Origin: Podarcis muralis
Taxonomy: Eukaryota
Length of the DNA: 64,000 nt
Assembly: GCF_964188315.1 (NCBI RefSeq)
Contig: NC_135656.1
Location: 44,454,001-44,518,000, forward strand
Direction of reading: 5' to 3'
Shown: piece after piece, positions 12,760 to 60,921 of the stretch
How positions within the stretch are numbered: position 1 is the stretch's first letter
Layout of the letters: each line of letters begins with the position of its first letter
The notes under the pieces: generated by a model
Seen by the model: the letters and a program-made list of their open reading frames with translations, nothing else
What the model was told of the DNA's origin: nothing
Database searches by the model: none
Translations under genes and position numbers: made by a program

Positions 12760-14789
12760 GCACAAGGGACAACAAAAGGTTCTCCGTCCCATTCATAATT
12801 TGCATGCTCAGATGATGGAATTCATCAGCAATTGATACAATGATGTGAGCAGTTGCTTCATTGACTGGTACCTCAATTCGTTACTGTTTGACCTCACTGC
12901 CACTAAAGATTTTAACAAGGTTGTTTTGGGTATCTGAAAACCAAGCACAGAAAGAGTGTTTCTGCTGTGAATCCTATCCCGAGTTTATAAAGCACTCTGA
13001 GTTTTGCAAACTGATTTGCCCTCACATACGTTTTGTGCAGCAAATCACTATTTTTGCTTCTTTACATATGGAATAAATGAGGTGGGGGGAGATCGTTTGC
13101 CCAAAGCAACACCTTCTCTGATTTATTTATATTTAATGGCAGAAATATGGCTACTTGAGAAATAATTGCATTTTTTATTTAAAAAACTGTCATGATGAAT
13201 GTGCGTGCACACACACACTGGCCCTGATAAGCTTTTGCTAACGTTTCTTTTTTTAGTGGCAGGGCTTGTTTTGCTTTCAATGTGAGCAGCAAAGGTTGCA
13301 GAAAGGAAAGCTTTCCCCCAGAATGAGGATGCCGTTATACAAATTCTGCTAAATTCTTGTTTCTAGGCCAGCTGTAGCAAGGGCAAAGCAGACAGTTCCT
13401 GATATAGTAAATAGGACCAGTATTAAGTTACTTGTGAAGATAGTACCTGCTGGGCGGAAGCAACCTGGACTTAGGTGTACAAGGGGGGAAAGAATGTTTG
13501 CTGATCCTGGTGATGGATAAGAGTCTGCAGGGAAGAATCATAATGCTGTACTTCTCTGCCTGAAGGGACAGCCGTCATGTGGTAAACTCCCACCTGCTTT
13601 CCAGCTGCCGAGGAACTGAGGACCCTGAACAGGTGGGATATTGCATAGCTGAAGCAAGGATGGGGAAAGACTGAGAGGAATGAAACAGAATGTGTGATAT
13701 CTCTCTTGGTGAGGAATGGTACTAGAAGGATTTGGGCACTGATAGCTGTCCTGGCTCACAGAAGTGGGTGGGATTAGGGAGTTAAGAAGGGTGAGATGCA
13801 ATAGCTCGGGGGATTACAAACTTCTAGTTTACTTCCTTGCTTATGGCAGATTAGACATGTAAAACCTAGAGCAATTTGGAATAAAACTGCACACCAATCA
13901 ACACTCAGGGAATTTCTCATGTTTCTTAAGAGCCTACCTAGGTGTCATGCTTGAGAAGAAAATATAACAAATTAGAGAACAGGCCACAATGGTAATCCTA
14001 GAATTCTAGAATCAGAATCTGGAGAGTAGCGTTTACTTATTCAAGACCTTGTTGCCAAGTAAACAAAAGTGTCAGCTGAGTGGAACGCAGAATCTGGTGA
14101 TGCTTCTAGTGTTCACAGCAGCATCAAACTTTACATTTATACTGAAACTGGAGTAATGCATTGCTTGTCACTTATAAAATGCAGAGCTAGAAGTTTATGT
14201 CTGCCTTTCCACAATTCCAATGCCATATACACACAGATGAAAACAAATTATTTCTGAAATCACATGTCATTAGTTTCCAGAGTGTAAGGCACATCTTTGG
14301 GTAGAGTCATGCTGAACCAAGAGTTGAGATGAATGGTAGAAAGGCTGAAAAGTGAAGCATCCTTGTAACGTGTTTACAAACCCAGCAAGATAATGAGATA
14401 CAAACCTCCATGGCCACTCACCCTTGGTTTATTATCGTATTCAGCTATAGACACGTTCCAGAGTCTTGCAAACTTCAGCTCCCATATCTGGTGGCATGGA
14501 AGTGGAGATTTAAAAGTACTTTGATTTCTTTGACCTGCGGAAGGCACATAATGGCTATGTTATGTCACTGTGAGACATGTGGGCAGGAACTGGCAGTAAG
14601 TATCCTGGCTGCAGGAAATCTGATTTTGGGGCTCACAACATGGGAAAGGCAACAGTTTACAAAATTAAAACATTTAAAAACTCACTTTTTATTCTTATTA
14701 AAGCTTTCGGTTCTTATTTTTTCTTACCGCCTACCAGCAGATGCTTAATTTAAGAAATAATCAGCATATTGCTAGGCGTGTTCAACTTT

Positions 14790-15140
14790 AAAGGTAAAGG
14801 GACCCCTGACCATTAGGTCCAGTCAAGGCTGACTCTGGGATTGCGGCGCTCATCTCGCTTTATTGGCTGAAGGAGCCGGCGTACGGCTTCCAGGTCATGT
14901 GGCCAGCATGACTAAGTAGCTTCTGGCAAACTAGAGCAGCACACGGAAACGCCGTTTACCTTCCCGCTGGAGCGGTACCTATTTATCTACTTGCACTTTG
15001 ATGTGCTTTCAAACTGCTAGGTTGGCAGGAGCTGGGACTGAGCAATGGCAGCTTACCCCGTCAGGGGGATTCAAACTGCCGACCTTCTGATCGGCAAGCC
15101 CTAGGCTCTGTGGTTTAACCCACAGCGCCACCCGCGTCCC
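14790..15140 (-). mobile_element. Sauria SINE, full length
   Basis: tRNA-like head GGGACGCGGGTGGCGCTGTGGG, B-box-like GTTTGAATCC, Bov-B-like 3' part and (ACCTTT)n tail. Near-TSD gtgttcaac(t/c)tt on both sides. Confidence 0.9.
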
Positions 15141-15210
15141 TTGTGTTCAACCTTACTACTATATAATAAGATTAATTTTATAAATCGCAATACCCTAAAA
15201 CAGTTTAAGT

Positions 15211-23457: not shown

Positions 23458-24347
23458 TGTTATAAGAATTTTAATGTCTCAAATATAGAATAAATATTCA
23501 TAAATGCACACATATCTAAATATATGAGCCATGTGTCTGAAATAGTATGGGAGAGCAATCCTGAAGCCATTTTGACTCTCCCAACGACCTCAAATATTCC
23601 CCTGCAGGAAGGGAGGCAAATGGGGAAAGCCTTCCCATTGTCTTTTTTGCTTGCAAATCCTGCCTTAAGGGCATATTTGTGTATGAATAGGGTGAGCCTG
23701 TGACCTGGATTCAGGAACAAAAGTATTAACCATCGCAAAAGAATTGCCAGACTGCCCAGGTAATGTAATCAGTGACCTTTATCAGGTATCCTGGCAGGCA
23801 GGATTTGTGCTGTAGATTGCCTCCTTCTTTGATATATGTGGTAAAAGGTAAAGGTAAAGGTAAAGGACTCCAGACGGTAAAGTCCAATCAAAGGTGACTA
23901 TGGGGTAGCGGCTCTCATCTTGCTTTCAGGCTGAGGGAGCCGGCGTTTGTCCACAGACAGCTTTCCGGGTCATGTGGCCAGCATGACTAAACCGCTTCTG
24001 GCACAACGGAACACCGTGACGGAAACCAGAATGCATGGAAATGTGATATATGTATGATGTTTTAGGGTGTGGTGGTCTCAGGCTACAGGGTGGGCAATTT
24101 CAAAAGTCTAGATAAGGGCTTGTGGACCATTGTTCAGGGTTCTCCTCCCTCCTGCATGTGGGGAGTGGGGACTGTGTTGCAACAGTTCCTTGAATAAAGA
24201 TCAGGCTTACTAGCTGCTTTGCTTCTCAATATACGTACTCTGGTTGGCCTCTGTTATTTTCTCCTACCGATAGGGAACCTACTTAAGGACTCTATACGGG
24301 CTCTGGAATACCCCATAAGGGAAAGGGAGCAGTTTTTTCTTACAACA
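23458..24347 (+). mobile_element. Solo LTR (4-bp TSD class) interrupted by a SINE
   Basis: Termini TGTTATAAGAA...TTCTTACAACA (11-bp inverted repeat, 1 mismatch), 4-bp TSD gtgg (23454-23457, 24348-24351), AATAAA at 24193-24198. Confidence 0.75.
23842..24043 (-). mobile_element. 5'-truncated Sauria SINE nested in the solo LTR
   Basis: (AAAGGT)n tail and SINE 3' body, with 10-bp TSD tgatatatgt (23830-23839, 24044-24053). Confidence 0.82.
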
Positions 24348-39000: not shown

Positions 39001-42000
39001 ATTTATTAGGATCTAAGTGAGGTTAGATTTGCCAAAGTCTATTTCATCCTTGCAGGACAGGTCACTTAGATCCAGAAATAGATGCAAAACATCCCTCTAG
39101 TTGGTCCATGCTACTCAAGCAGCACAGAGAGCTGAAAGGGCAGCTGATTAATGTTGTTGTCTCTATGCAAAAATGCTTAAAAACAACAACAACCTCCCTT
39201 ATTTTCATAAAGTGATGCTGATTATCAGAGGTACCTGGTTGGGGTGGGAAAAGAGGTGGACCCCTCCCCCAATTTTTCACTTTCCCTTTTAACAGTAATA
39301 ATTTCTGGTCCATCATATATGATGGCAGGTGATTAATAGGTGGGTGGTTCCAAGCACCTATCAAAATGGCCCACAGAGGTAGGTTCAGTTCTAGATTTGG
39401 TCCTTTAGCGTGATCCAGTTGCCCACCTCATAGTACACCAAGCCATTTTCTGTGAAAAAACAATTCTCTCTCCTGTATCTTGTGAGTTTTTTTAAATATT
39501 CTTTACCGTTTGTGAATTTGGTTCCTCTTCTCCCCATCTATGTCGCGGGGAGTTCTGCGGCAAGGAAAAGTAGCATTAGCACAGTATATAAGCTCCATTT
39601 TGTATTTTAGTTTTACAAAATTACAAAATATTTTTTTTAAAGTGTAAGACTGAAATTAACTTTATTGAGGAAGTTGAAAGAAAATACCCTGAAATGGCTC
39701 TGGTTTCCTCCCAGCTCAAAAGAAGCTTTAATATTAAAAGTATGGTTTATACTGCCACCTAGTGAAGAAATTCAGTATCTTCTGCAAAATGAAGGGCACG
39801 CCCAAATGAGTAAGCACTCCTGTTGGTTTGTTCATAGCAAAAGCTTTAGGCTTAAGGTAGATTTAAGCCTGATCTAGCGCGATGGGCTGAGCTCCCGTTG
39901 CTCGGTTCCTGCTCCTGCCAACCTAGCAGTTCAAAAGCACATCAGTGCAAGTAGATAAATAGGTACCACTCCAGCAGGAAGGTAAACGGCGTTTCCGTGC
40001 GCTGCTCTGGTTCGCCAGAAGCGGCTTAATCATGCTGGTCATATGACCTGGAAGCCGTACGCTGGCTCCCTCGGCCAATAAAGTGAGATGAGCGCCGCAG
40101 CCCCAGAGTCGGCCACGACTGGACCTAATAGTCAGGGGTCCCTTAACCCTTAGTGCTTATTTGTGCCCTCAGCAGCATCCTATACCTTTAATAGCAGAGG
40201 TGACATGTGAGAAAGGGGGACACACATCCCTTGTGGTAAAACACCAGGGTACTAATGTTTTCAGTTCACTTACCACTTGCTCCGTCAGCTTTCCTGAAGC
40301 CAGCTCCTCCTGGAGCTTCTGCACTTTCAGTGAGCGTTTAGCCTGTTAAAATGAAAGCAGGATTACTTCTCACATTGGACTGAAAGTTTCCACAACCACT
40401 TCATTCATCATGCAAACATCGATCTTATTTAATTAAAATTAAATCCGTCTAGTTTGGTACTAAAATTCAGTATGAACAATCCCTTTACTAACCCTTAGCA
40501 AGCAGAAGTTCTTCTCACCAGAGGGCATCTTTCACTATACAAGTGGGAATTATCCTCTGCTTTGTAAGTGGTGTTCTGCATGCTCAACAGAACTTCCTCT
40601 TCCCCTCCTCCCCTTGTGTACCCCCAAAATTTGTTCTAGAGACCCCCCCCAACAATTTGGAGAGATTTTGAAGATCCACGGTGGTCTGCAGGAAGAAGAG
40701 GAAGTGGACGTTTTCTTGCACAAGTATGCTGCATGAGCAAAACAGCAGCACTGGACAAAATGCATTGTTTGAAAGTCACTCTTGGCTCAATGGTCTGGCT
40801 GAGTAAAAGGCAGCTTTTCATGCACCTTACCTTAAACATTTCTACTGGTATTTAAGTTAGTGTGCAAGTTAATTCTACTCTAGATTAAAAAGTGACCTAT
40901 TTTAACATTGATATATAACACAACTTCCCAAGAGACTGTCAGAATCTTTTTAAAGGAAAAAAACACACCACCCTACTTACTAAATCAACCTTGGCGTATT
41001 CTTCTACAATCTTCATATGCTCCTCTGGATTATAGCCATTCCAACGGTCTCTTTTTCCATCATAGTCAAACATCAGCTGTGGTTGCATGTGCTCATCTGG
41101 TGCAATGTTGGTTCCTGTGAATTTGGCTCCAACCTTTCTAGGTCTCTGCAGGGAAGGAATTAGATCACAACCTTAGCATTGCTCCTGTTCTTCAGAAAGG
41201 AACTGGCCACAATATTATTATTTTTTTGTATCAGAGAGGTTGGGGAAATTAATTTTTCAGGATGTTAACAAGATTCACAGTTAAAGGTAAAGGTACCCCT
41301 GACCAAAGGTCCAGTCGTGACCGACTCTGGGGTTGCGCGCTCATCTCGCTCAGGAGGCCGGGAGCCGGCGCTTGTCCGAAGACAGCGTCTGGGTCACGTG
41401 GCCAGCTTGACTAAGCCGCAGCTGGCGAGCCAGCACCAGCGCAGCACACGGAAATGCCGTTTACCTTCCCGCTAGAAAGCAGTCCCTATTTATCTACTTG
41501 CACTTTGGGGTGCTTTTGAACTGCTAGGTAGGCAGGAGCTGGGACCGAATGACAGGAATCACCCTGTCGCGCGGGGATTCAAACCGCCGACCTTTCGATC
41601 AGCAAGTCCTAGGCACTGTGGTTTAACCCACAGCACCACCCGCGGTCCCCCAAGATTCACAGTTAATTTTATCCAATTTCATGTAAAAATGATAATAATG
41701 CTTACCTCTAAGCAATCTTTCTTCTTGTGTGTAAGGGCACCACAGTTCTCACATGCTCCTTTGCGGTACTTGGTTGCATGAGAATTCTGAGCAAAAAACA
41801 AAAACAAATGAAAACTTCCTATCAACAGCACACCTACTTCCCTCCGCTCAGCCTCGATCAGAATATAGTTGGCCCCATTTGACCACAAAAGAAACAGATC
41901 TACAATACAATTAATTTTATCTGTAATGATAATTGCAGAGAACTTGATCCTTAGCTTGAAGTGTACCCCTGCAAGTCAACTAGTGTAAAACTATCCCACA

Positions 42001-53372: not shown

Positions 53373-56300
53373 TAACAGCAAAAATTAATCACCTCCAAAA
53401 TTCAGTCTTGACCCCAACAGAAACTAAATGCCCACATCAGTAGTCTCTAGGCAGCTGGTCCTGCAGGTAAGATAGTCTCTGTTCCTTGCAACAGTAGCAG
53501 CTTTTGTAGTGGGAGTCAGTCTGGGCCTGGGCCTGCAAAGCAGGGAGCAGGTCTTGTAGGAATTACAGCAAAGATGGTTTCAGATACATTCATCTACCCC
53601 TGCTTGTAACAGTGAATGCAGGTTATCAACCTTGACTAGTAGTACAGACATGACTTAGATTCCCCTGTTCTTTTAAAAGTGTTATCTACCTGAACAGCCC
53701 ATACAGGTGTATACTAAAGCAGCTGTTCATGAATATGTTTGTACTGAGCATTCTTAATTTGTGATTCCTGTGGGAGAATACAAATGATGGAGTCAATGAG
53801 AATGGAAATCCACTTCTAGCTGCAGGAGCTCTGTCTCCTGCCTGCAGCAGGCAAAGGGAGTTACATGAAAGGAGAGGCTATACTTTTAAACATTGTTTTC
53901 TGTAATACGGATTATAGCCATAGGTTGCAGCTAGTGTGGTTAGTTTCTTTGGGACAGGAGTAATAATGGCATGTATGGGGTACAGAACGGGACGGCTAGT
54001 TTCCAGAACTCCAATGAATATAAGGGAATATAAGTGGGTAAGAAATCAGATAAATGAACATGAAATGCCAACAGGTGCTCGGCTGAAGCTGGCACAAATG
54101 ATATAGCTGACAATGGAGGAGAATCTTTATGTAAATACTGGATTAATGGGGGTTCTATTAGGGTATAATCCCCTTTAAAGAAACCTCAATCTGATTGCTT
54201 GACCCATATAATCACACAGTTGGAGGGCATCCCCATTGCACCTGGGTTGAGGGCTCATGCACACATCCAAATCTTCTGCAAAGCTTATCAAATAGTCAAG
54301 GTCACACACTCTTTATCACTTCTGTTATTCAGAAATGGGCACCATAATTGAATGTACTTAATGTGATCTAGGTAATAAACTTTTAAGCTGTGCAGCCAGG
54401 TGGCAATAATGTGTTAGTTAGAGTGAACTCGTTTTTTCCTTAAACCCTCATGCATTTCCCCAAAGCATATTCTGATATCTAGCGAAGATACCTGAAACTT
54501 CTTACCCAAAGTAGTTAAACCACAATTTTCTATAGGTTTCATCTCTAGGTTCTAGAACAGAGCCAAACAGGTAATTATTGCCGTGACAGTTTATAACATG
54601 ATGACAAAGTACATTTTTGAGAGCGTGTTATGAGGCATACTAACAGTGTAGTCCTAAACATGTTTACTAAGAAGCAAGTTCCATCTGTTTATTGGGGGGG
54701 GGGCTTTCTCCTTGGTAAGTGGGCATGCGTAGGATTGTAGCCGGTATCTGTCACCTTAATAGCATAAAATATGGTAATAATGCTCAGTGTTAATGGAGTG
54801 CATTTGACCCACAGGTTTTTAACTGCAGGTACAAAGGCTTTTGTCTCAGTGCTTGGGTTAATGATATGTGGATACATACAGTATAGTACAGAAGTGAAAT
54901 AAAGTATGGCTAGGAGAGAGGAGATTTGCTCTGCAACATTATGCTGCTTTGCTTTGAACTTGAAGGTATCAGGTATTGTAATAGATTATGGGCTTGAGCC
55001 TGGGCTTTCGGTCCTGATATGTTACAAAAAATTCCCAATTGCATTGCCCTATACAAAAAATGCATACCTTTGTAACGAGAACTTATTCTGTACTAACTGT
55101 CATGACGCCATTTCAAGGTCACTGTAATTTGCTAACTGATGACTCCAAATCTGAATTCATTGAATAGTGTCTGAACTTCAAATGATGTTATAAAAGAGCC
55201 ATTTTAATGCTGATTAGTTAAAATTAATTTCAATTAAAACATCTCATATGCTGTGTTCACTAGAAGTGTGGGGTTAGTTTCTTTGGAAATCAAGTTCATA
55301 ATGATAACTTTGTTAAGTGATAAGATGTACAATGACAAAGAAAGTGCTTAAAATTTAACACATCATTAACTTAGCTTTGGGGCCATTAAGTTAACTTACT
55401 ATACAATGTATTATCAAAGAATACTTGAGGATGAATGAACAGCCTTCAGACCCTTGACTTACCTGCTCTGCAATGCTTTCCTTTTAATATATTGATATGT
55501 AAAACCATTCCATTGTATATGATGATTTGCTTATGAAGGCAGTTGTCCCTCCGGGATTCTTATTTCCAGTACAATAACACCTCAGAGCTGTAAATTCTAA
55601 ATAACTGGTGCAAAATAGGATGGTGTGGCAGGTAGGGAAATGTCTTTAGGAAAGTAGATTATAATTTCACACCCTGTTGAGTGAGCTGTGCTGTCACCAG
55701 ACTCCTGTAAAAGCGAGGTGGTATTGTATTGGTTTTCTTCATGTTAGCAAATGAAGCAGAACAATCTTTTGGTAAAGAAACTATTGAAAGGACAGAGGAG
55801 AAGAGGAATGTGCTCAGAGGTGGAAGAGACATCAACAAGCATCTATCCGACTCTAGATGCACATTTACACTGGAGACAGCAAGGCTTCTTAATTCACCCC
55901 TTTTTTTCTGCTCATGCCAACTGACAAGCCACTCATAAAACTCTAGAGAATGCTGTGAGAGGCCTCTTATTCATTTGCAAATCCCAAAAGCTAACCGGAA
56001 GATGTACTATGTGGAGCCAAGTACCACGGAGGTGTGACCATGAAGGGAAGCAGTGCTCATTGAGCAGCAAGAATTATTGCATTTACTCCTCTTTCCATGT
56101 ACAGTACCCATGCACACAGTGATAATTAGTGTGTAAGTGTATCTTCAATAGTTTGTAAAAGAATGTCTTTTAAGTTTGTAAAAGAATGTCTTTTAAGGTC
56201 TTCTCCTCCTTCCAACTTGCTTTCTGTTTTTAAAAACCTAGTACTTCCTTCTCTCTCTCTCTCTCTCTCTTACAATTTTTTATTTGTTTTTAAACAAATA

Positions 56301-56537
56301 CAAATACAAGAACACTTATCCAGCAGTACATCTAATGGTGTTTGTTTTATCCACTGTCTCTAGACATACACTTGCACATTCAACATTCAAACATAATGTA
56401 ACCTCTCCTTATTGAGTGGTTGGTATAAGGAGGTCTTGATTTTGGTCATTAACATAGTGAAAGAAAAGGGTCCACATTTCTTGGAAGGTGTCTTTATTTA
56501 GTATGCCTTTAATTGCCCTCCTGTATCTGGTAAGATG

Positions 56538-56903
56538 GGACGCGGGTGGCGCTGTGGGTAAAACCTCAGCGCCTAGGACTTGCCAATCTTCAGGTCGGCG
56601 GTTCGAATCCCCGCGGCGGGGTGCGCTCCCATCGTTCGGTCCCAGCGCCTGCCAACCTAGCAGTTCGAAAGCACCCCTGGGTGCAAGTAGATAAATAGGG
56701 ACCGCTTACCAGCGGGAAGGTAAACGGCGTTCCGTGTGCTGTACTGGTGCCGGCTCGCCAGATGCAGCTTGTCACACTGGCCACGTGACCCGGAAGTGTC
56801 TGCGGACAGCGCTGGCTCCCGGCCTATAGAGTGAGATGAGCGCACAACCCTAGAGTCTGGCAAGACTGGCCCGTATGGGCAGGGGTATCTTTACCTTTAC
56901 CTT
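56538..56903 (+). mobile_element. Sauria SINE, full length, tandem copy A
   Basis: Head ggacgcgggtggcgctgtggg, B box ggttcgaatcc, tail ttacctttacctt. Resembles the 41284 copy (cccagcgcc, ggccacgtgacc). Confidence 0.92.
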
Positions 56904-56917
56904 TATCTGGTAAGATG

Positions 56918-57275
56918 GGACACAGGTGGCGCTGTGGGTTAAACCACAGAGCCCAGGACTTGCCAATCAGAAGGTCGGTGGTTTGAATCCCCATGATGGG
57001 GTTAGCTCCTGTTGCTTGGTCCCTGCTCCTGCCAACCTAGCAGTTCGAAAGCATGTCAAAGTGCAAGTAGATAAATAGGTACCGCTCTGGCGGGAAGGTA
57101 AACGATGTTTTCCTTGTGCTGCTCTGGTTCGCCAGAAGCGGCTTAGTCATGCTGGCCACATGACCCGGAAGCTGTCTGCGGACAAACGCTGGCTCCCTTG
57201 ACCCATAGAGCGAGATGAGCGCGCAACCCCAGAGTCAGTCACAGCTAGACCTAATGGTCAGGGGTCCTTTTACTT
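56918..57275 (+). mobile_element. Sauria SINE, full length, tandem copy B
   Basis: Head ggacacaggtggcgctgtggg. Resembles the 14790 copy (ttaaaccacagagcc, catgctggccacatgacc). Confidence 0.92.
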
Positions 57276-58554
57276 TATCTGGTAAGATGCTCGAACACTG
57301 CTGTATCCCAGATACTATTTCCCCATGTGCTCAGGGGTATTTCAATCTGGTTCTTCCACTGTTGAGCTATTGCTAATTGTGCTGTGGTCAGTAAAAAGCT
57401 TACTAGTTCTCTGTGTTGCAGGGTGGAACCTAGGTTGGTGTCCAAAGACAGTAAGACTAAGACAGGATTTGGAGAAAGGGATTGGCCTGTAATGGCAGAT
57501 ATAATGGAGAATTCTGAATTCCATAATTTTTTTAAACATGGGGGCATTCCCACCAAACATGAATAAATAAACCAAGATTCCCATAGCCCTTCCAACATAA
57601 AGAGGAAAGGGAAGGATAATGGAGATAGTGGAGATCTCTAGAAGTAGCTGTGCACCACTTTGAGGAGGGTGAGGGGTGGCAGATGGAAAAAGATTACATG
57701 GGCAGGTGAGGGAACTGCCTGCACTTTCACAAGGCACGTGTATCTGGAGAATATGGATGGAACCAGCATGGAACTAACATGTACATATGTGTAAACCTTT
57801 CTTTCTTTCTGTTATTTTGTGGAGATAAAAACTTCAATAAAAATTATTTTTTTTTAAAAAAAGGAAATTAGGTGGAGTATTGCAAATAAACTTAGGTGCT
57901 GCTGTGTACCCTTAGTTTCAGATCAACGGGGGGTGGGGTGGGGGTGGGGAGAAAACTATTCCCAAGGACAAGTACAAGGAGTGTGCTTATGGTATTTTTG
58001 GATCCGTTATAGGAAGCCTATTTGTATAAGACACTAAAGAGGCAGAGTGCCAAGGACAAAGGGTGTCCTTGAATGCTGAAATGTATTTTAGAGAATGAAG
58101 TTTTCATAAGTTGCCGCAGATGGAGGTTTTACCTTCTGTCGCATGAATACCAAATGCCTTCTCTTTGCTTAGTCGTTGTGCGGTGAGAGCATATTCTGGG
58201 TCATTGCTCAGCAGCAAAAACTATTATTTTCTCAAAAATGCTTTCATAGTCCTCCTGAAGTTATTTGTCGATCACTTGATTGAAAAGTTCCAAACTTTGT
58301 CCTAGCCTGTTCCCTGAGCTCTTTGTGAAAGCAATGCAAGTGGCAACAGAATTCTGCATTTTCAATTTGTAACGCAAGTGAAATGAGAAATGTCTTGGCC
58401 CCCGTACATTTTAAGGGTGATTAGAAAAGCTGTTTCGAATATCACTAAAGCTGTGTTAGGGTTCAGCTTGTACAGTAGTAGCCCTCAAATCAAGTTTCTT
58501 AAACTATAAAGTCAAACAACACAAGCGCTTGTCTTCGCTAGACGTTTGTCACAC

Positions 58555-59639: not shown

Positions 59640-60130
59640 AGGACAGTTCTAAAATATATGTAAGAGATTGGCATTAGACATCTCACATCTCCAACAAAAG
59701 TATTTGCCATTTTGTGTATAGTACGATTAAAAAGTTTTGGCATTAGATACCATTTAAAAATCAAGGTTTACACTAGACATATTCTGTGGTACATTCAGCC
59801 ATGTCCATCTATGTATATTTATTGATACTTTCTGACCTTGTTCTTTCCCCCATTTGGACTGATAGAAATTGGGCAAACTCTCTTGATTCACAATAATGTT
59901 ATGAATTTTGCTTAACACATGTGTTGGGTATTCCTTCAACATTGACAGTTCAAATTTGGTAAGTCCTCTTAAAGAACTGTATTTGAGAATTAAGGGATAA
60001 ACAATAGTAAGGAGTTGCAAATATTGAAAAAAAGATGAGGATGGTTGTTGTTGCATCTTGTTAATGATTTCATTATATGATACCATCTTTGAAGCATTTC
60101 CTAAGTTATATGTAACCATATGTTTTCCAT
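59640..60130 (-). mobile_element. L1/Tx1-like ORF2 internal fragment
   Basis: ORF 59754-60119 has FFQYLQL and SKW.KEQG, followed by a KWYLMP (RWYxTP-like) motif. Confidence 0.6.
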
Positions 60131-60921
60131 AATACTGTATAGTTTTTTGATTGCCGTAGAAGGCAGTGACATTTTAATCCTTTAGAGGGCAGACATGTAA
60201 CAGAAAACAGTTTATCACCGGGATCTACTTCAAGTAAAGACAAGTAATGATGGATAGGCAGAAAGCTGGATAGCAGCCTTTTTAGAATAGATCATATAGG
60301 CCAGTGCTTCAAAATCATAAACTGTATATCCTGGATACAAACCCACATTGCAGGCACCTGTTTTTAAAATAAGGCTCTCACAGAGCTTAGTAGTTGTGAA
60401 GCAAGCAAACAACCAACCCAGAGTGAATTAAGAGGACATGCATTTTGGAGCGGAATTATACGTAGTTGGAGATTTTGGCACTGAGATCTTTGTATAGCTG
60501 AGTGACTTTAAAAATGCTGAAAATTTTGGGGTCTTTACAACATCTGTGCTACTGGCTGTCAAACTTTGGGTGTGGTGATCTGTCATGGAACAACCCCAGT
60601 GTTGAAGAAGATAACACTGGTTACCCAGACCTCATTGCTGGTTGCAAAGCCTCCCCTCCCCTTCACAGTTCCAGCTTCAAGGCCCCCAAAATGTAGGTCT
60701 GCCCCTGGTCAGGATGAATAACTATTGTCTAATTAATGGGTATGACGTGTGCAGCACAATCCTGAACTTGTATACTCAGAGAAAAGTCCCATTGAAATAA
60801 TGGGGTTCACTCCCAGGTAAGTGGGATTATGATTGCAGCCTTCGTCTGTGTATGTTTACTCAAAAGTAAGTCCCAACCTCAGGAGTGGTTTGGACAGCGC
60901 AAAGTTCCTGCAATCCCAATA

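What the first reader, a model, noticed from the sequence alone, without database searches (positions are those of the whole stretch)
56524..57289. Two different Sauria SINEs in tandem with the same 14-bp target site present three times
Seen: tatctggtaagatg at 56524-56537, 56904-56917 and 57276-57289, giving TSD-SINE A-TSD-SINE B-TSD. A and B differ at many positions and each resembles a different copy elsewhere in the window, so this is not a simple tandem duplication. Removing the block restores the host L1 frame (FEHLTRY-RRAIKG). Inference: either the Bov-B endonuclease recut exactly the same two positions, or two alleles with independent insertions at this site recombined through the TSD. 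Either implies precise target-site reuse, which undermines the assumption that SINE insertions are homoplasy-free markers.
Basis: partly seen in the sequence, partly recalled or inferred. Interest (0 to 1): 0.7.

Follow-up and report, generated by a model that had tools for sequence, protein, structure and literature searches.

The report
Two SINEs sharing one target site
Two jumping-gene copies (Sauria SINEs) from different subfamilies landed one after the other in exactly the same 14-base target inside an older repeat of a lizard genome; this is a real but expected rare by-product of the known target preference of the enzyme that moves them.

Summary
TATCTGGTAAGATG occurs exactly three times (56524, 56904, 57276), bracketing two full-length, same-strand Sauria SINEs, A and B.

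A and B are about 79% identical and are not sister copies.
- Seventeen alignment columns, including three shared indels, group A with the copy at 41279 and B with the copies at 14789, 39878 and 23851.
- An ML tree supports A+41279 at 98/95, and an AU test rejects an A+B clade (p=0.028).
- A keeps more CpGs than B (21/26 against 12/26), so A looks younger.

The site fits the published Bov-B/Sauria SINE "Tn-TA" signature: the TSD starts with TA downstream of a T stretch. After the first insertion, the upstream TSD copy keeps that whole context.

Best reading: two sequential retrotranspositions reused both break positions.

A rough calculation predicts about 10-100 such exact tandems per genome. 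Precise target reuse and its small homoplasy rate are already documented for L1-driven SINEs, so this is a new example of a known kind.

Not achieved: read-level proof of the A-TSD2-B junction, because read laying was swamped by SINE paralogues. A duplication followed by whole-element gene conversion remains a minor rival.

The parts
56508..56514 (+). T-rich stretch (TTTAATT) upstream of the target: TTT at -16..-14 and TT at -11..-10 relative to the first TSD base
   Evidence: Read directly. It corresponds to the 'Tn' part of the published Tn-TA signature, a T stretch about 10 nt upstream of the TSD start.
56524..56537 (+). TSD copy 1 (TATCTGGTAAGATG). It starts with TA and keeps the original upstream flank.
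   Evidence: Exact match; context.
56538..56903 (+). Sauria SINE A, full length, and probably the younger element. A-box-like TGGCGCTGTGG at 56547-56557, B box GGTTCGAATCC at 56600-56610, tail TCTTTACCTTTACCTT. 29 CpGs (o/e 0.86).
   Evidence: Groups with the copy at 41279 at 98/95 support. Shares a 6-bp and two 2-bp indel states with it.
56904..56917 (+). TSD copy 2, between the tail of A and the head of B
   Evidence: Exact match. Its first two bases, TA, continue the (ACCTTT)n tail phase of A.
56918..57275 (+). Sauria SINE B, full length, and probably the older element. The same A-box-like sequence at 56927-56937, a decayed B box GGTTTGAATCC at 56980-56990, a short tail CCTTTTACTT. 14 CpGs (o/e 0.53).
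   Evidence: Lies with the copies at 14789, 39878 and 23851 in 17 columns.
57276..57289 (+). TSD copy 3, followed by the original downstream flank
   Evidence: Exact match. Contig record 22 of run X15 covers 57233-57375 without a difference.
56290..56523 (-). Host repeat, 3' part: the last 42 codons of a non-LTR (L1-like) ORF2 and its 3' UTR, up to the A-rich/(GA)n end
   Evidence: Translation. Depth is 40-110 times single copy in all four runs. No second copy in the window.
57290..57693 (-). Host repeat, upstream part: the C-terminal region of ORF2 with an HVWWECP motif. The frame is continuous with the 3' part once the block is removed.
   Evidence: Pfam and PDB blank. Weak zf-RVT lead.
41279..41647 (-). 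Comparison copy of the A-like lineage. TSD TAACTGTGAATCTTG (15 bp) starts with TA, with TT at -11/-10.
14789..15139 (-). Comparison copy of the B-like lineage. TSD TAA[G/A]GTTGAACAC (13 bp) starts with TA, with a T-rich stretch upstream.
39878..40152 (+). 5'-truncated comparison copy of the B-like lineage
23851..24002 (-). 3' fragment with a (ACCTTT)n tail, B-like; 10-bp TSD ACATATATCA

Best explanation
Two separate Bov-B-mediated retrotranspositions hit the same target on the same chromosome, one after the other.

First event (inferred to be B). The Bov-B endonuclease nicked the bottom strand at the TA of ...TTTAATTGCCCTCCTG|TATCTGG... inside an L1-like ORF2 remnant. This site fits the enzyme's known 'T stretch, about one helical turn, then TA' preference. 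The (ACCUUU)n tail of the SINE RNA primed reverse transcription. The top strand was broken 14 nt downstream, after ...GATG. Repair left B between two copies of the 14-mer.

Second event (inferred to be A). A comes from a different and younger source lineage. The upstream 14-mer copy still carried the complete original recognition context, so the first nick fell at the same bond. The 5' junction formed again after ...GATG. Possible reasons are a preferred nick spacing and a 1-nt G microhomology with the GGG 5' end that both SINE RNAs share. This created the third 14-mer.

Shown: the triple TSD; that A and B are of different lineages; the CpG difference; the fit to the published motif.

Inferred: the order of events; the role of the motif in reuse; why the second break coincided.
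For: 1. Three exact 14-mers bracket two full-length SINEs on the same strand, each with its own tail length.
2. A and B are not sisters. Seventeen columns, including a 6-bp and two 2-bp indel events, split (A, c41279) from (B, c14789, c39878, c23851). Two columns conflict, and one column, at a CpG, unites A and B; 1.35 such coincidences are expected by chance. The ML tree gives A+c41279 98/95, and the AU test rejects A+B at p=0.028.
3. Non-CpG divergence between A and B is 15.3%, yet the CpG-free TSDs show 0 differences in 28 bp. Under equal age that has P of about 0.01.
4. The ages differ. Intact ancestral CpGs are A 21/26 and B 12/26 (Fisher p=0.02), with CpG o/e 0.86 against 0.53. In the laid contigs, loose-end consensus sequences repeat several apparent 'private' states of A (e.g. 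CTCGCCAGATGCAGCT), while B departs from its type consensus.
5. The site and the two other intact window TSDs all start with TA and have T's at about -10/-11 or further upstream. This matches the Tn-TA signature and the (ACCTTT)n tail published for Sauria SINEs (PMC6007223, PMC13295347).
6. I took published copy numbers (about 77,000 per 1.5 Gb) and a motif frequency of 0.75-1.1% measured in the window. These predict 7-170 exact triple-TSD tandems per genome, and 0.2-5 in the 729 windows this scan has read from this genome.
7. There is precedent for reuse of both breaks. Identical TSDs were found for independent insertions at APC and NF1 (PMC4859970). The spacing between the two L1 nicks is nearly constant (PMC2836564).
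Against: - No read or contig shown to me spans A-TSD2-B. Read laying was swamped by 10^5-10^6 depth-equivalents of SINE paralogues. It confirmed only the outer junctions: X1 record 4 (56469-56559, exact) and X15 record 22 (57233-57375, exact).
- The subfamily argument rests on four other copies in one 64-kb window, and the AU p-value is modest.
- The TTT lies at -16..-14, further upstream than the published ~-10; only TT sits at -11/-10.
- The terminal branch of A is not shorter than that of B in the tree (0.11 against 0.08). The 'A is younger' inference therefore rests on CpG retention and on the reading that many 'private' states of A are subfamily states.
- Whole-element gene conversion after a TSD-mediated duplication would give the same end state.
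Confidence: 0.72

Rival explanations
1. TSD-mediated tandem duplication of one SINE plus one TSD, by unequal sister-chromatid exchange or replication slippage between the two 14-bp repeats. One of the two copies was then replaced whole by ectopic gene conversion from a SINE of another subfamily.
For: Unequal exchange between the flanking TSDs gives exactly TSD-SINE-TSD-SINE-TSD. A conversion templated by another SINE would naturally end at the element's borders and leave the TSDs untouched. Complete SINE gene conversion has been reported for Alu (my own knowledge, not checked here). Nothing or 33 excludes it formally.
Against: - It needs two rare events instead of one.
- The tract would have to cover at least about 340 of 366 bp. 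A/B differences run from column 21 or 39 to column 378 of the alignment, including three indels and the tail length.
- The donor and recipient lineages differ by more than 15% at non-CpG sites. Established knowledge is that homeologous recombination is strongly suppressed at that level.
- A and B share no derived states beyond the one CpG coincidence expected by chance.
Confidence: 0.1
2. Two alleles each received an independent insertion at the same site, A on one haplotype and B on the other. An unequal crossover within the 14-bp TSD then joined them.
For: It gives the same final structure and also explains the different subfamilies.
Against: - It still needs precise target reuse, plus a crossover confined to 14 bp of homology, so it is strictly less parsimonious.
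- The CpG data suggest B is about three to four times older than A. B was therefore probably fixed long before A arrived, which leaves no empty allele for A to enter.
Confidence: 0.07
3. Assembly artefact: two haplotypes, or two paralogous host-repeat copies, carrying different SINEs at the same position were concatenated.
For: The middle junction was not seen in any contig listed by read laying. The host repeat is multi-copy, at 40-110 times single-copy depth in its 3' part.
Against: - Assemblers do not join reads on a 14-bp overlap.
- Both outer junctions are reproduced exactly in independent samples (X1 record 4, X15 record 22).
- The best runs hold 0.71-0.79 of the sampled 31-mers of the stretch. 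That is more than the roughly 60% that lies outside the two SINEs.
- Even if true, it would still imply two insertions at the same site.
Confidence: 0.05
4. Simple tandem duplication of one SINE plus TSD, followed by divergence in place.
For: The 380/372-bp unit structure with three identical 14-mers looks like a tandem repeat.
Against: - The AU test rejects A+B as a clade (p=0.028), and A+c41279 has 98/95 support.
- Three indel states are shared with other loci.
- There is 15.3% non-CpG divergence in the SINEs but 0/28 in the TSDs, P about 0.01.
- CpG decay is unequal (p=0.02).
Confidence: 0.02

Closest known systems
Precise parallel (independent, same-site) SINE insertions, as quantified in primates and toothed whales (Doronina et al.; PMC10531181)
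   Same: Two independent SINE insertions use the same target with a TSD shift of 0-1 nt. The elements can be told apart by subfamily. Target preference of the partner LINE is the suspected cause.
   Different: Those cases lie in different lineages, one insertion per genome, and are driven by L1. Here both insertions sit in tandem on one chromosome, so the target is present three times, and the driver is an RTE-clade LINE (Bov-B).
Same-site de novo L1-mediated insertions in human disease genes: NF1 hotspots, APC, BTK, F9 (table in PMC4859970)
   Same: The first nick is reused repeatedly. In two of the five same-orientation pairs listed (APC: Alu and L1; NF1: two Alus) the TSDs are identical, so both breaks were reused.
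   Different: Those insertions arose in different individuals and never in tandem. The target is the L1 endonuclease site TTTT/AA rather than Tn-TA.
Tn-TA insertion signature of RTE-clade LINEs and their SINEs (Nishiyama and Ohshima 2018, PMC6007223; Nakatsuka and Ohshima 2026, PMC13295347)
   Same: The TSD begins with the T of a TA downstream of a T stretch. The SINE tail is (ACCTTT)n, with 1-2 nt of overlap between tail and target. TSDs are about 10-15 bp.
   Different: The parts of those papers I read describe the preference, not double occupancy of a site. The TTT here lies at -16..-14, with only TT at -11/-10.
Direct-repeat-mediated tandem duplication by unequal exchange between the TSDs of a retroposon
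   Same: It produces the same TSD-element-TSD-element-TSD layout.
   Different: It predicts sister copies of equal age. Here the copies belong to different lineages and differ in CpG decay.
Complete SINE gene conversion: an older element replaced at an occupied locus by a younger subfamily (reported for Alu; my own knowledge)
   Same: It can put a different subfamily between unchanged TSDs.
   Different: It does not create a third TSD, so it would need a prior duplication. The donor and recipient here are more than 15% diverged.

Membership tests
Sauria SINE (tRNA-related SINE mobilised by Bov-B LINE) | tRNA-related 5' region with pol III A and B boxes | tested here: met
   A has TGGCGCTGTGG at 56547-56557 (10/11 to TRGCNNAGTGG) and GGTTCGAATCC at 56600-56610. 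B has the same A-box-like sequence and a CpG-decayed B box, GGTTTGAATCC. ARAGORN and Rfam call no tRNA, as expected for a degenerate tRNA-like head.
Sauria SINE (tRNA-related SINE mobilised by Bov-B LINE) | 3' end with (ACCTTT)n microsatellite-like repeats | tested here: met
   Tails: A is TCTTTACCTTTACCTT. c41279 and c14789 are CCTTTACCTTTA. c23851 has four units. B has one decayed unit. The published tail is (ACCTTT)n.
Sauria SINE (tRNA-related SINE mobilised by Bov-B LINE) | 3' region shared with a Bov-B LINE of the same genome | not tested
   I did not identify a Bov-B LINE in the window. This feature is taken from the literature.
Sauria SINE (tRNA-related SINE mobilised by Bov-B LINE) | TSD of about 7-15 bp that starts with T (of TA) downstream of a T stretch | tested here: met
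   The TSDs of 14, 13 and 15 bp all start with TA, with T's at -10/-11 or -14..-16.
Precise parallel / same-site independent insertion | The two elements are of independent origin: distinguishable subfamilies, not sisters | tested here: met
   17 against 2 against 1 informative columns, including three indels. Tree support 98/95 and AU p=0.028. This rests on only six copies from one window.
Precise parallel / same-site independent insertion | Same target with a TSD shift of 1 nt or less | tested here: met
   Three identical 14-mers with shift 0.
Precise parallel / same-site independent insertion | Intermediate states exist (empty site, one element only) in relatives or populations | tested here: inconclusive
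   A 163-nt contig of run X10 (a different organism label, about 4% diverged) aligns to 56429-56537 and stops exactly at the end of TSD1, with 54 nt unplaced. This could be an allele without A, or a paralogous host-repeat copy. The joints table was truncated.
Simple tandem duplication | The copies are each other's closest relatives and of equal age | tested here: not met
   as above.
Host = L1 ORF2 remnant | Recognisable L1 ORF2 domains | tested here: inconclusive
   Frame continuity is confirmed. Pfam and PDB give no hit. There is a weak zf-RVT lead and an HVWWECP motif. No RT domain lies within reach; the element is 5'-truncated near 57700.

The most novel reading that the evidence does not exclude
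A Sauria SINE insertion regenerates its own preferred target twice. The upstream TSD keeps the original Tn-TA context. The downstream TSD, which starts with TA, acquires T stretches from the (ACCTTT)n tail at -6..-8 and -12..-14. If so, occupied sites would be hit again more often than equivalent empty sites. Head-to-tail Sauria SINE tandems with shared TSDs would then be systematically enriched. The homoplasy rate of Bov-B-driven SINE markers in squamates would also be measurably higher than that of L1-driven SINEs.
Probability: 0.2. Interest if true: 0.5.

Novelty: new member of a known kind. Interest (0 to 1): 0.3.

Why it matters
SINE presence/absence characters are used as nearly homoplasy-free markers, in squamates as elsewhere. 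This locus shows both break positions of a Bov-B-driven insertion being reused, with both products kept side by side so that the two events can be told apart.

It supports the idea that the split Tn-TA preference concentrates insertions on about 1% of positions. It also gives a simple genome-wide statistic, the number of exact triple-TSD tandems, from which the same-site reuse rate for this LINE/SINE pair could be measured without any outgroup.

It does not overturn anything. Low rates of precise parallel insertion are already documented for L1-driven SINEs, and one case is about what the known preference predicts.

Tried and rejected
1. Read laying on 55900-57900 with four runs at 92% likeness. 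The SINE part recruited 10^5-10^6 depth-equivalents of paralogues. Only 15 of 514 joints were printed, and a tiny share of the pieces. The middle junction and any empty, A-only or B-only alleles were not visible. Both the run search and read laying are capped at one call, so I could not repeat with only the unique junction stretches.
2. The look-up of encoding contigs with the 107-aa host ORF, to fetch other assemblies of the locus.
3. Pfam, PDB-sequence and protein-atlas searches to confirm the host as L1. The first two were blank or spurious (WD40 designer repeats), and the atlas gave only a weak zf-RVT lead.
4. ARAGORN and Rfam on the block. No tRNA or RNA family was found, which is uninformative for a degenerate SINE head.
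5. A BLAST of the reconstructed empty site against the window. There is no paralogous host-repeat copy here, so no in-window empty-site control.
6. Scan notes on 'SINE tandem TSD' returned nothing. 'Sauria SINE' returned other SINE oddities in this genome but no second triple-TSD tandem.
7. Considered and rejected:
   - A single composite A-14mer-B retrocopy. The inner 14-mer would not equal the outer TSDs.
   - RT template switching. This leaves no TSD between the two parts.
   - Recombination between paralogous host repeats. This does not make a tandem.
8. I did not scan metagenome or prokaryote-genome collections for the junction, because they are very unlikely to hold lizard DNA.
Full report
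OBSERVATION

The 14-mer TATCTGGTAAGATG occurs exactly three times in the window, at 56524, 56904 and 57276, all on the + strand. No further match appears at one mismatch, and 0.04 matches are expected by chance. The copies bracket two elements:
- A, 56538-56903, 366 bp.
- B, 56918-57275, 358 bp.

Both start GGAC... directly after the G that ends the 14-mer. Both carry an A-box-like TGGCGCTGTGG and a B box (GGTTCGAATCC in A, GGTTTGAATCC in B). Both end in (ACCTTT)n-type repeats. These are the published hallmarks of Sauria SINEs. ARAGORN and Rfam see no tRNA or RNA family, which is normal for such heads.

On the minus strand the host reading frame ends ...AVFEHLTR at a TAA formed by TSD3 plus the last base of B. 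Without the block it reads on as HLTRYRRAIKG... for 42 more codons.

I could not confirm the label 'L1' for the host with a database:
- Pfam and PDB-sequence searches are blank.
- The protein atlas gives only a weak zf-RVT lead.
- An HVWWECP motif lies just upstream.
- The 3' part is 40-110 times single-copy depth in read contigs.

The host is thus a repeated, 5'-truncated non-LTR ORF2 tail. From my own knowledge of L1 C-termini it looks L1-like.

ARE A AND B SISTERS?

No.
- They are 78.8% identical. Each is closer to another copy in the window: A to 41279-41644 (83.7%), B to 14789-15139 (84.0%).
- In a six-copy alignment, 17 columns split (A, c41279) from (B, c14789, c39878, c23851). These include a 6-bp insertion and two 2-bp indels. 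Two columns conflict. One column, a CpG site, unites A and B. About 1.35 such identical CpG decays are expected by chance.
- An ML tree gives A+c41279 98/95 support. An AU test rejects a tree with A+B together (delta lnL 9.8, p=0.028). The indels are additional to that test.
- Non-CpG divergence between A and B is 15.3%, while the CpG-free TSDs show no change in 28 bp, P about 0.01 if they were of the same age.

RELATIVE AGE

A has 29 CpGs (o/e 0.86) and B has 14 (o/e 0.53). At 26 sites that were ancestrally CpG, A keeps 21 and B keeps 12 (Fisher p=0.02). This implies an age ratio of about 0.3.

The terminal branch of A in the tree is not shorter than that of B (0.11 against 0.08). However, the loose-end consensus sequences from genome-wide SINE contigs repeat several of the apparent 'private' states of A (for example ...CTCGCCAGATGCAGCT...), whereas B departs from the consensus of its type at several CpG sites. 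I therefore read A as a fairly young member of a subfamily not otherwise present in the window, and B as an older insertion. This is moderately, not strongly, supported.

WHY THE SAME SITE?

Two papers describe the insertion signature of RTE-clade LINEs and their SINEs, including Sauria SINEs of the green anole, wall lizard, bearded dragon and Komodo dragon. They report the following (PMC6007223; PMC13295347):
- The TSD starts with the T of a TA.
- About one helical turn upstream lies a stretch of about three T's.
- The SINE tail is (ACCTTT)n.
- One or two bases of tail/target overlap are common.

The present target reads TTTAATTGCCCTCCTG|TATCTGGTAAGATG. It has TA at the start, TT at -11/-10 and TTT at -16..-14. 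The two other intact TSDs in the window (13 and 15 bp) also start with TA and have T's near -10. In each case the TA continues the phase of the tail repeat.

After the first insertion, the upstream TSD copy keeps the entire upstream recognition context. A second nick at the same bond is therefore what the preference predicts. The downstream copy gains T stretches from the SINE tail (CTTTACCTT|TA), so it too resembles a target.

The coincidence of the second break needs a preferred spacing or a local determinant. Three observations bear on this:
- The published logo places the SINE start about 12 nt downstream.
- In humans the two L1 nicks are a nearly constant 15-16 bp apart (PMC2836564).
- Among the five same-orientation same-site human insertion pairs tabulated in PMC4859970, two have identical TSDs (APC, NF1).

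Both SINE RNAs begin GGG and the TSD ends in G, so a 1-nt microhomology may also have favoured the same 5' junction. That last point is my inference.

HOW SURPRISING IS IT?

I used these inputs:
- 77,228 Sauria SINE hits in a 1.51-Gb genome.
- A frequency of 0.75-1.1% for 'TTT within about -16..-7, then TA' in the window.
- An assumed 50-70% of insertions on such sites.
- A chance of 0.15-0.4 of the same TSD length.

These give 7-52 exact triple-TSD tandems per genome, or up to about 170 if copy number follows this window's density. That corresponds to 0.2-5 in the 729 windows the scan has read from this genome. The parameters are rough, but finding one case is about what the known preference predicts.

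RIVALS

(a) TSD-mediated duplication followed by whole-element gene conversion from another subfamily. This gives the same picture. It needs two rare events, a tract covering about 340 of 366 bp including three indels and the tail, and recombination between partners more than 15% apart. A and B share no excess of derived states. I give it about 0.1.

(b) Independent insertions on two alleles joined by a crossover inside the 14-mer. This still needs target reuse plus an extra rare event, and it fits poorly with unequal ages. About 0.07.

(c) Assembly artefact. This is unlikely on principle, because a 14-bp overlap does not join reads. Both outer junctions are reproduced exactly in independent samples (X1 record 4, 56469-56559; X15 record 22, 57233-57375). 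The best runs hold more 31-mers than the non-SINE part can supply. But the middle junction was not shown. About 0.05.

(d) Simple duplication and divergence. Contradicted, as set out above.

READS

One lead remains. In run X10 (another organism label, flanks about 4% diverged), a 163-nt single-copy-depth contig aligns to 56429-56537 and stops exactly at the last base of TSD1, with 54 nt unplaced. If A followed TSD1 there, the alignment should have run on. The contig therefore represents either an allele or species without A at this site, or a paralogous copy of the host repeat. I could not tell which.

COMPARISON WITH WHAT IS KNOWN, AND VERDICT

Precise parallel SINE insertions are documented and quantified: 0.01-0.04% in primates and 0.18-0.29% in toothed whales (PMC10531181). 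Recurrent same-site insertions are known in human genes.

What is particular here is that both events are preserved in cis, with the target present three times, and that the driver is Bov-B with its split Tn-TA signature. I found no description of that in the papers I read, but my literature search was limited.

I file it as a new member of a known kind. It is a real feature and a neat natural record of reuse of both break positions. It does not challenge the use of SINE markers beyond the small homoplasy rate already accepted.

Noticed in passing
window 56429-56537 (run X10, record 11): A contig from a different organism label (flanks about 4% diverged) stops aligning exactly at the last base of TSD1, with 54 nt unplaced. 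It may be an allele or species lacking SINE A, or a paralogous host-repeat copy.
   Followed up: partly
window 55900-57800 (run X9): Run X9 carries the same organism label as the best holders. Yet it is 3-4.5% different in the single-copy flanks and has no contig over 56168-56234. This suggests a deeply diverged lineage within the species label, or a local deletion.
   Followed up: no
window 15140-15155 (minus-strand copy c14789): Three extra bases (AAG) lie between the 5' TSD and the SINE head GGACGCGGG. The two TSD copies differ at one base (TAAGG... against TAAAG...). The extra bases are possibly untemplated nucleotides added at the 5' junction.
   Followed up: no
window 23851-24060 (minus strand): A 5'-truncated element has four (ACCTTT) tail units and a 10-bp TSD, ACATATATCA. 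The TSD begins with A preceded by T in the 5' flank. That is the pattern published for Bov-B LINEs rather than for Sauria SINEs.
   Followed up: no
window 56239-56300: A (CT)n microsatellite and an A/T-rich stretch sit at the 3' end of the host non-LTR element (read on the minus strand: A-rich, then (GA)n). Read laying skipped it as a repeat.
   Followed up: no
window 56302-56523 versus 57307-57700: The contig depth of the host repeat drops about 20-fold across the SINE insertion site, from 40-110 times single copy in the 3' part to 2-16 times upstream. Most genomic copies of this repeat are therefore truncated close to this point.
   Followed up: no
window 59757-60173 (minus strand): A 139-codon open frame whose sequence pattern is reminiscent of another non-LTR ORF2 C-terminal fragment. 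Pfam gave no hit.
   Followed up: partly
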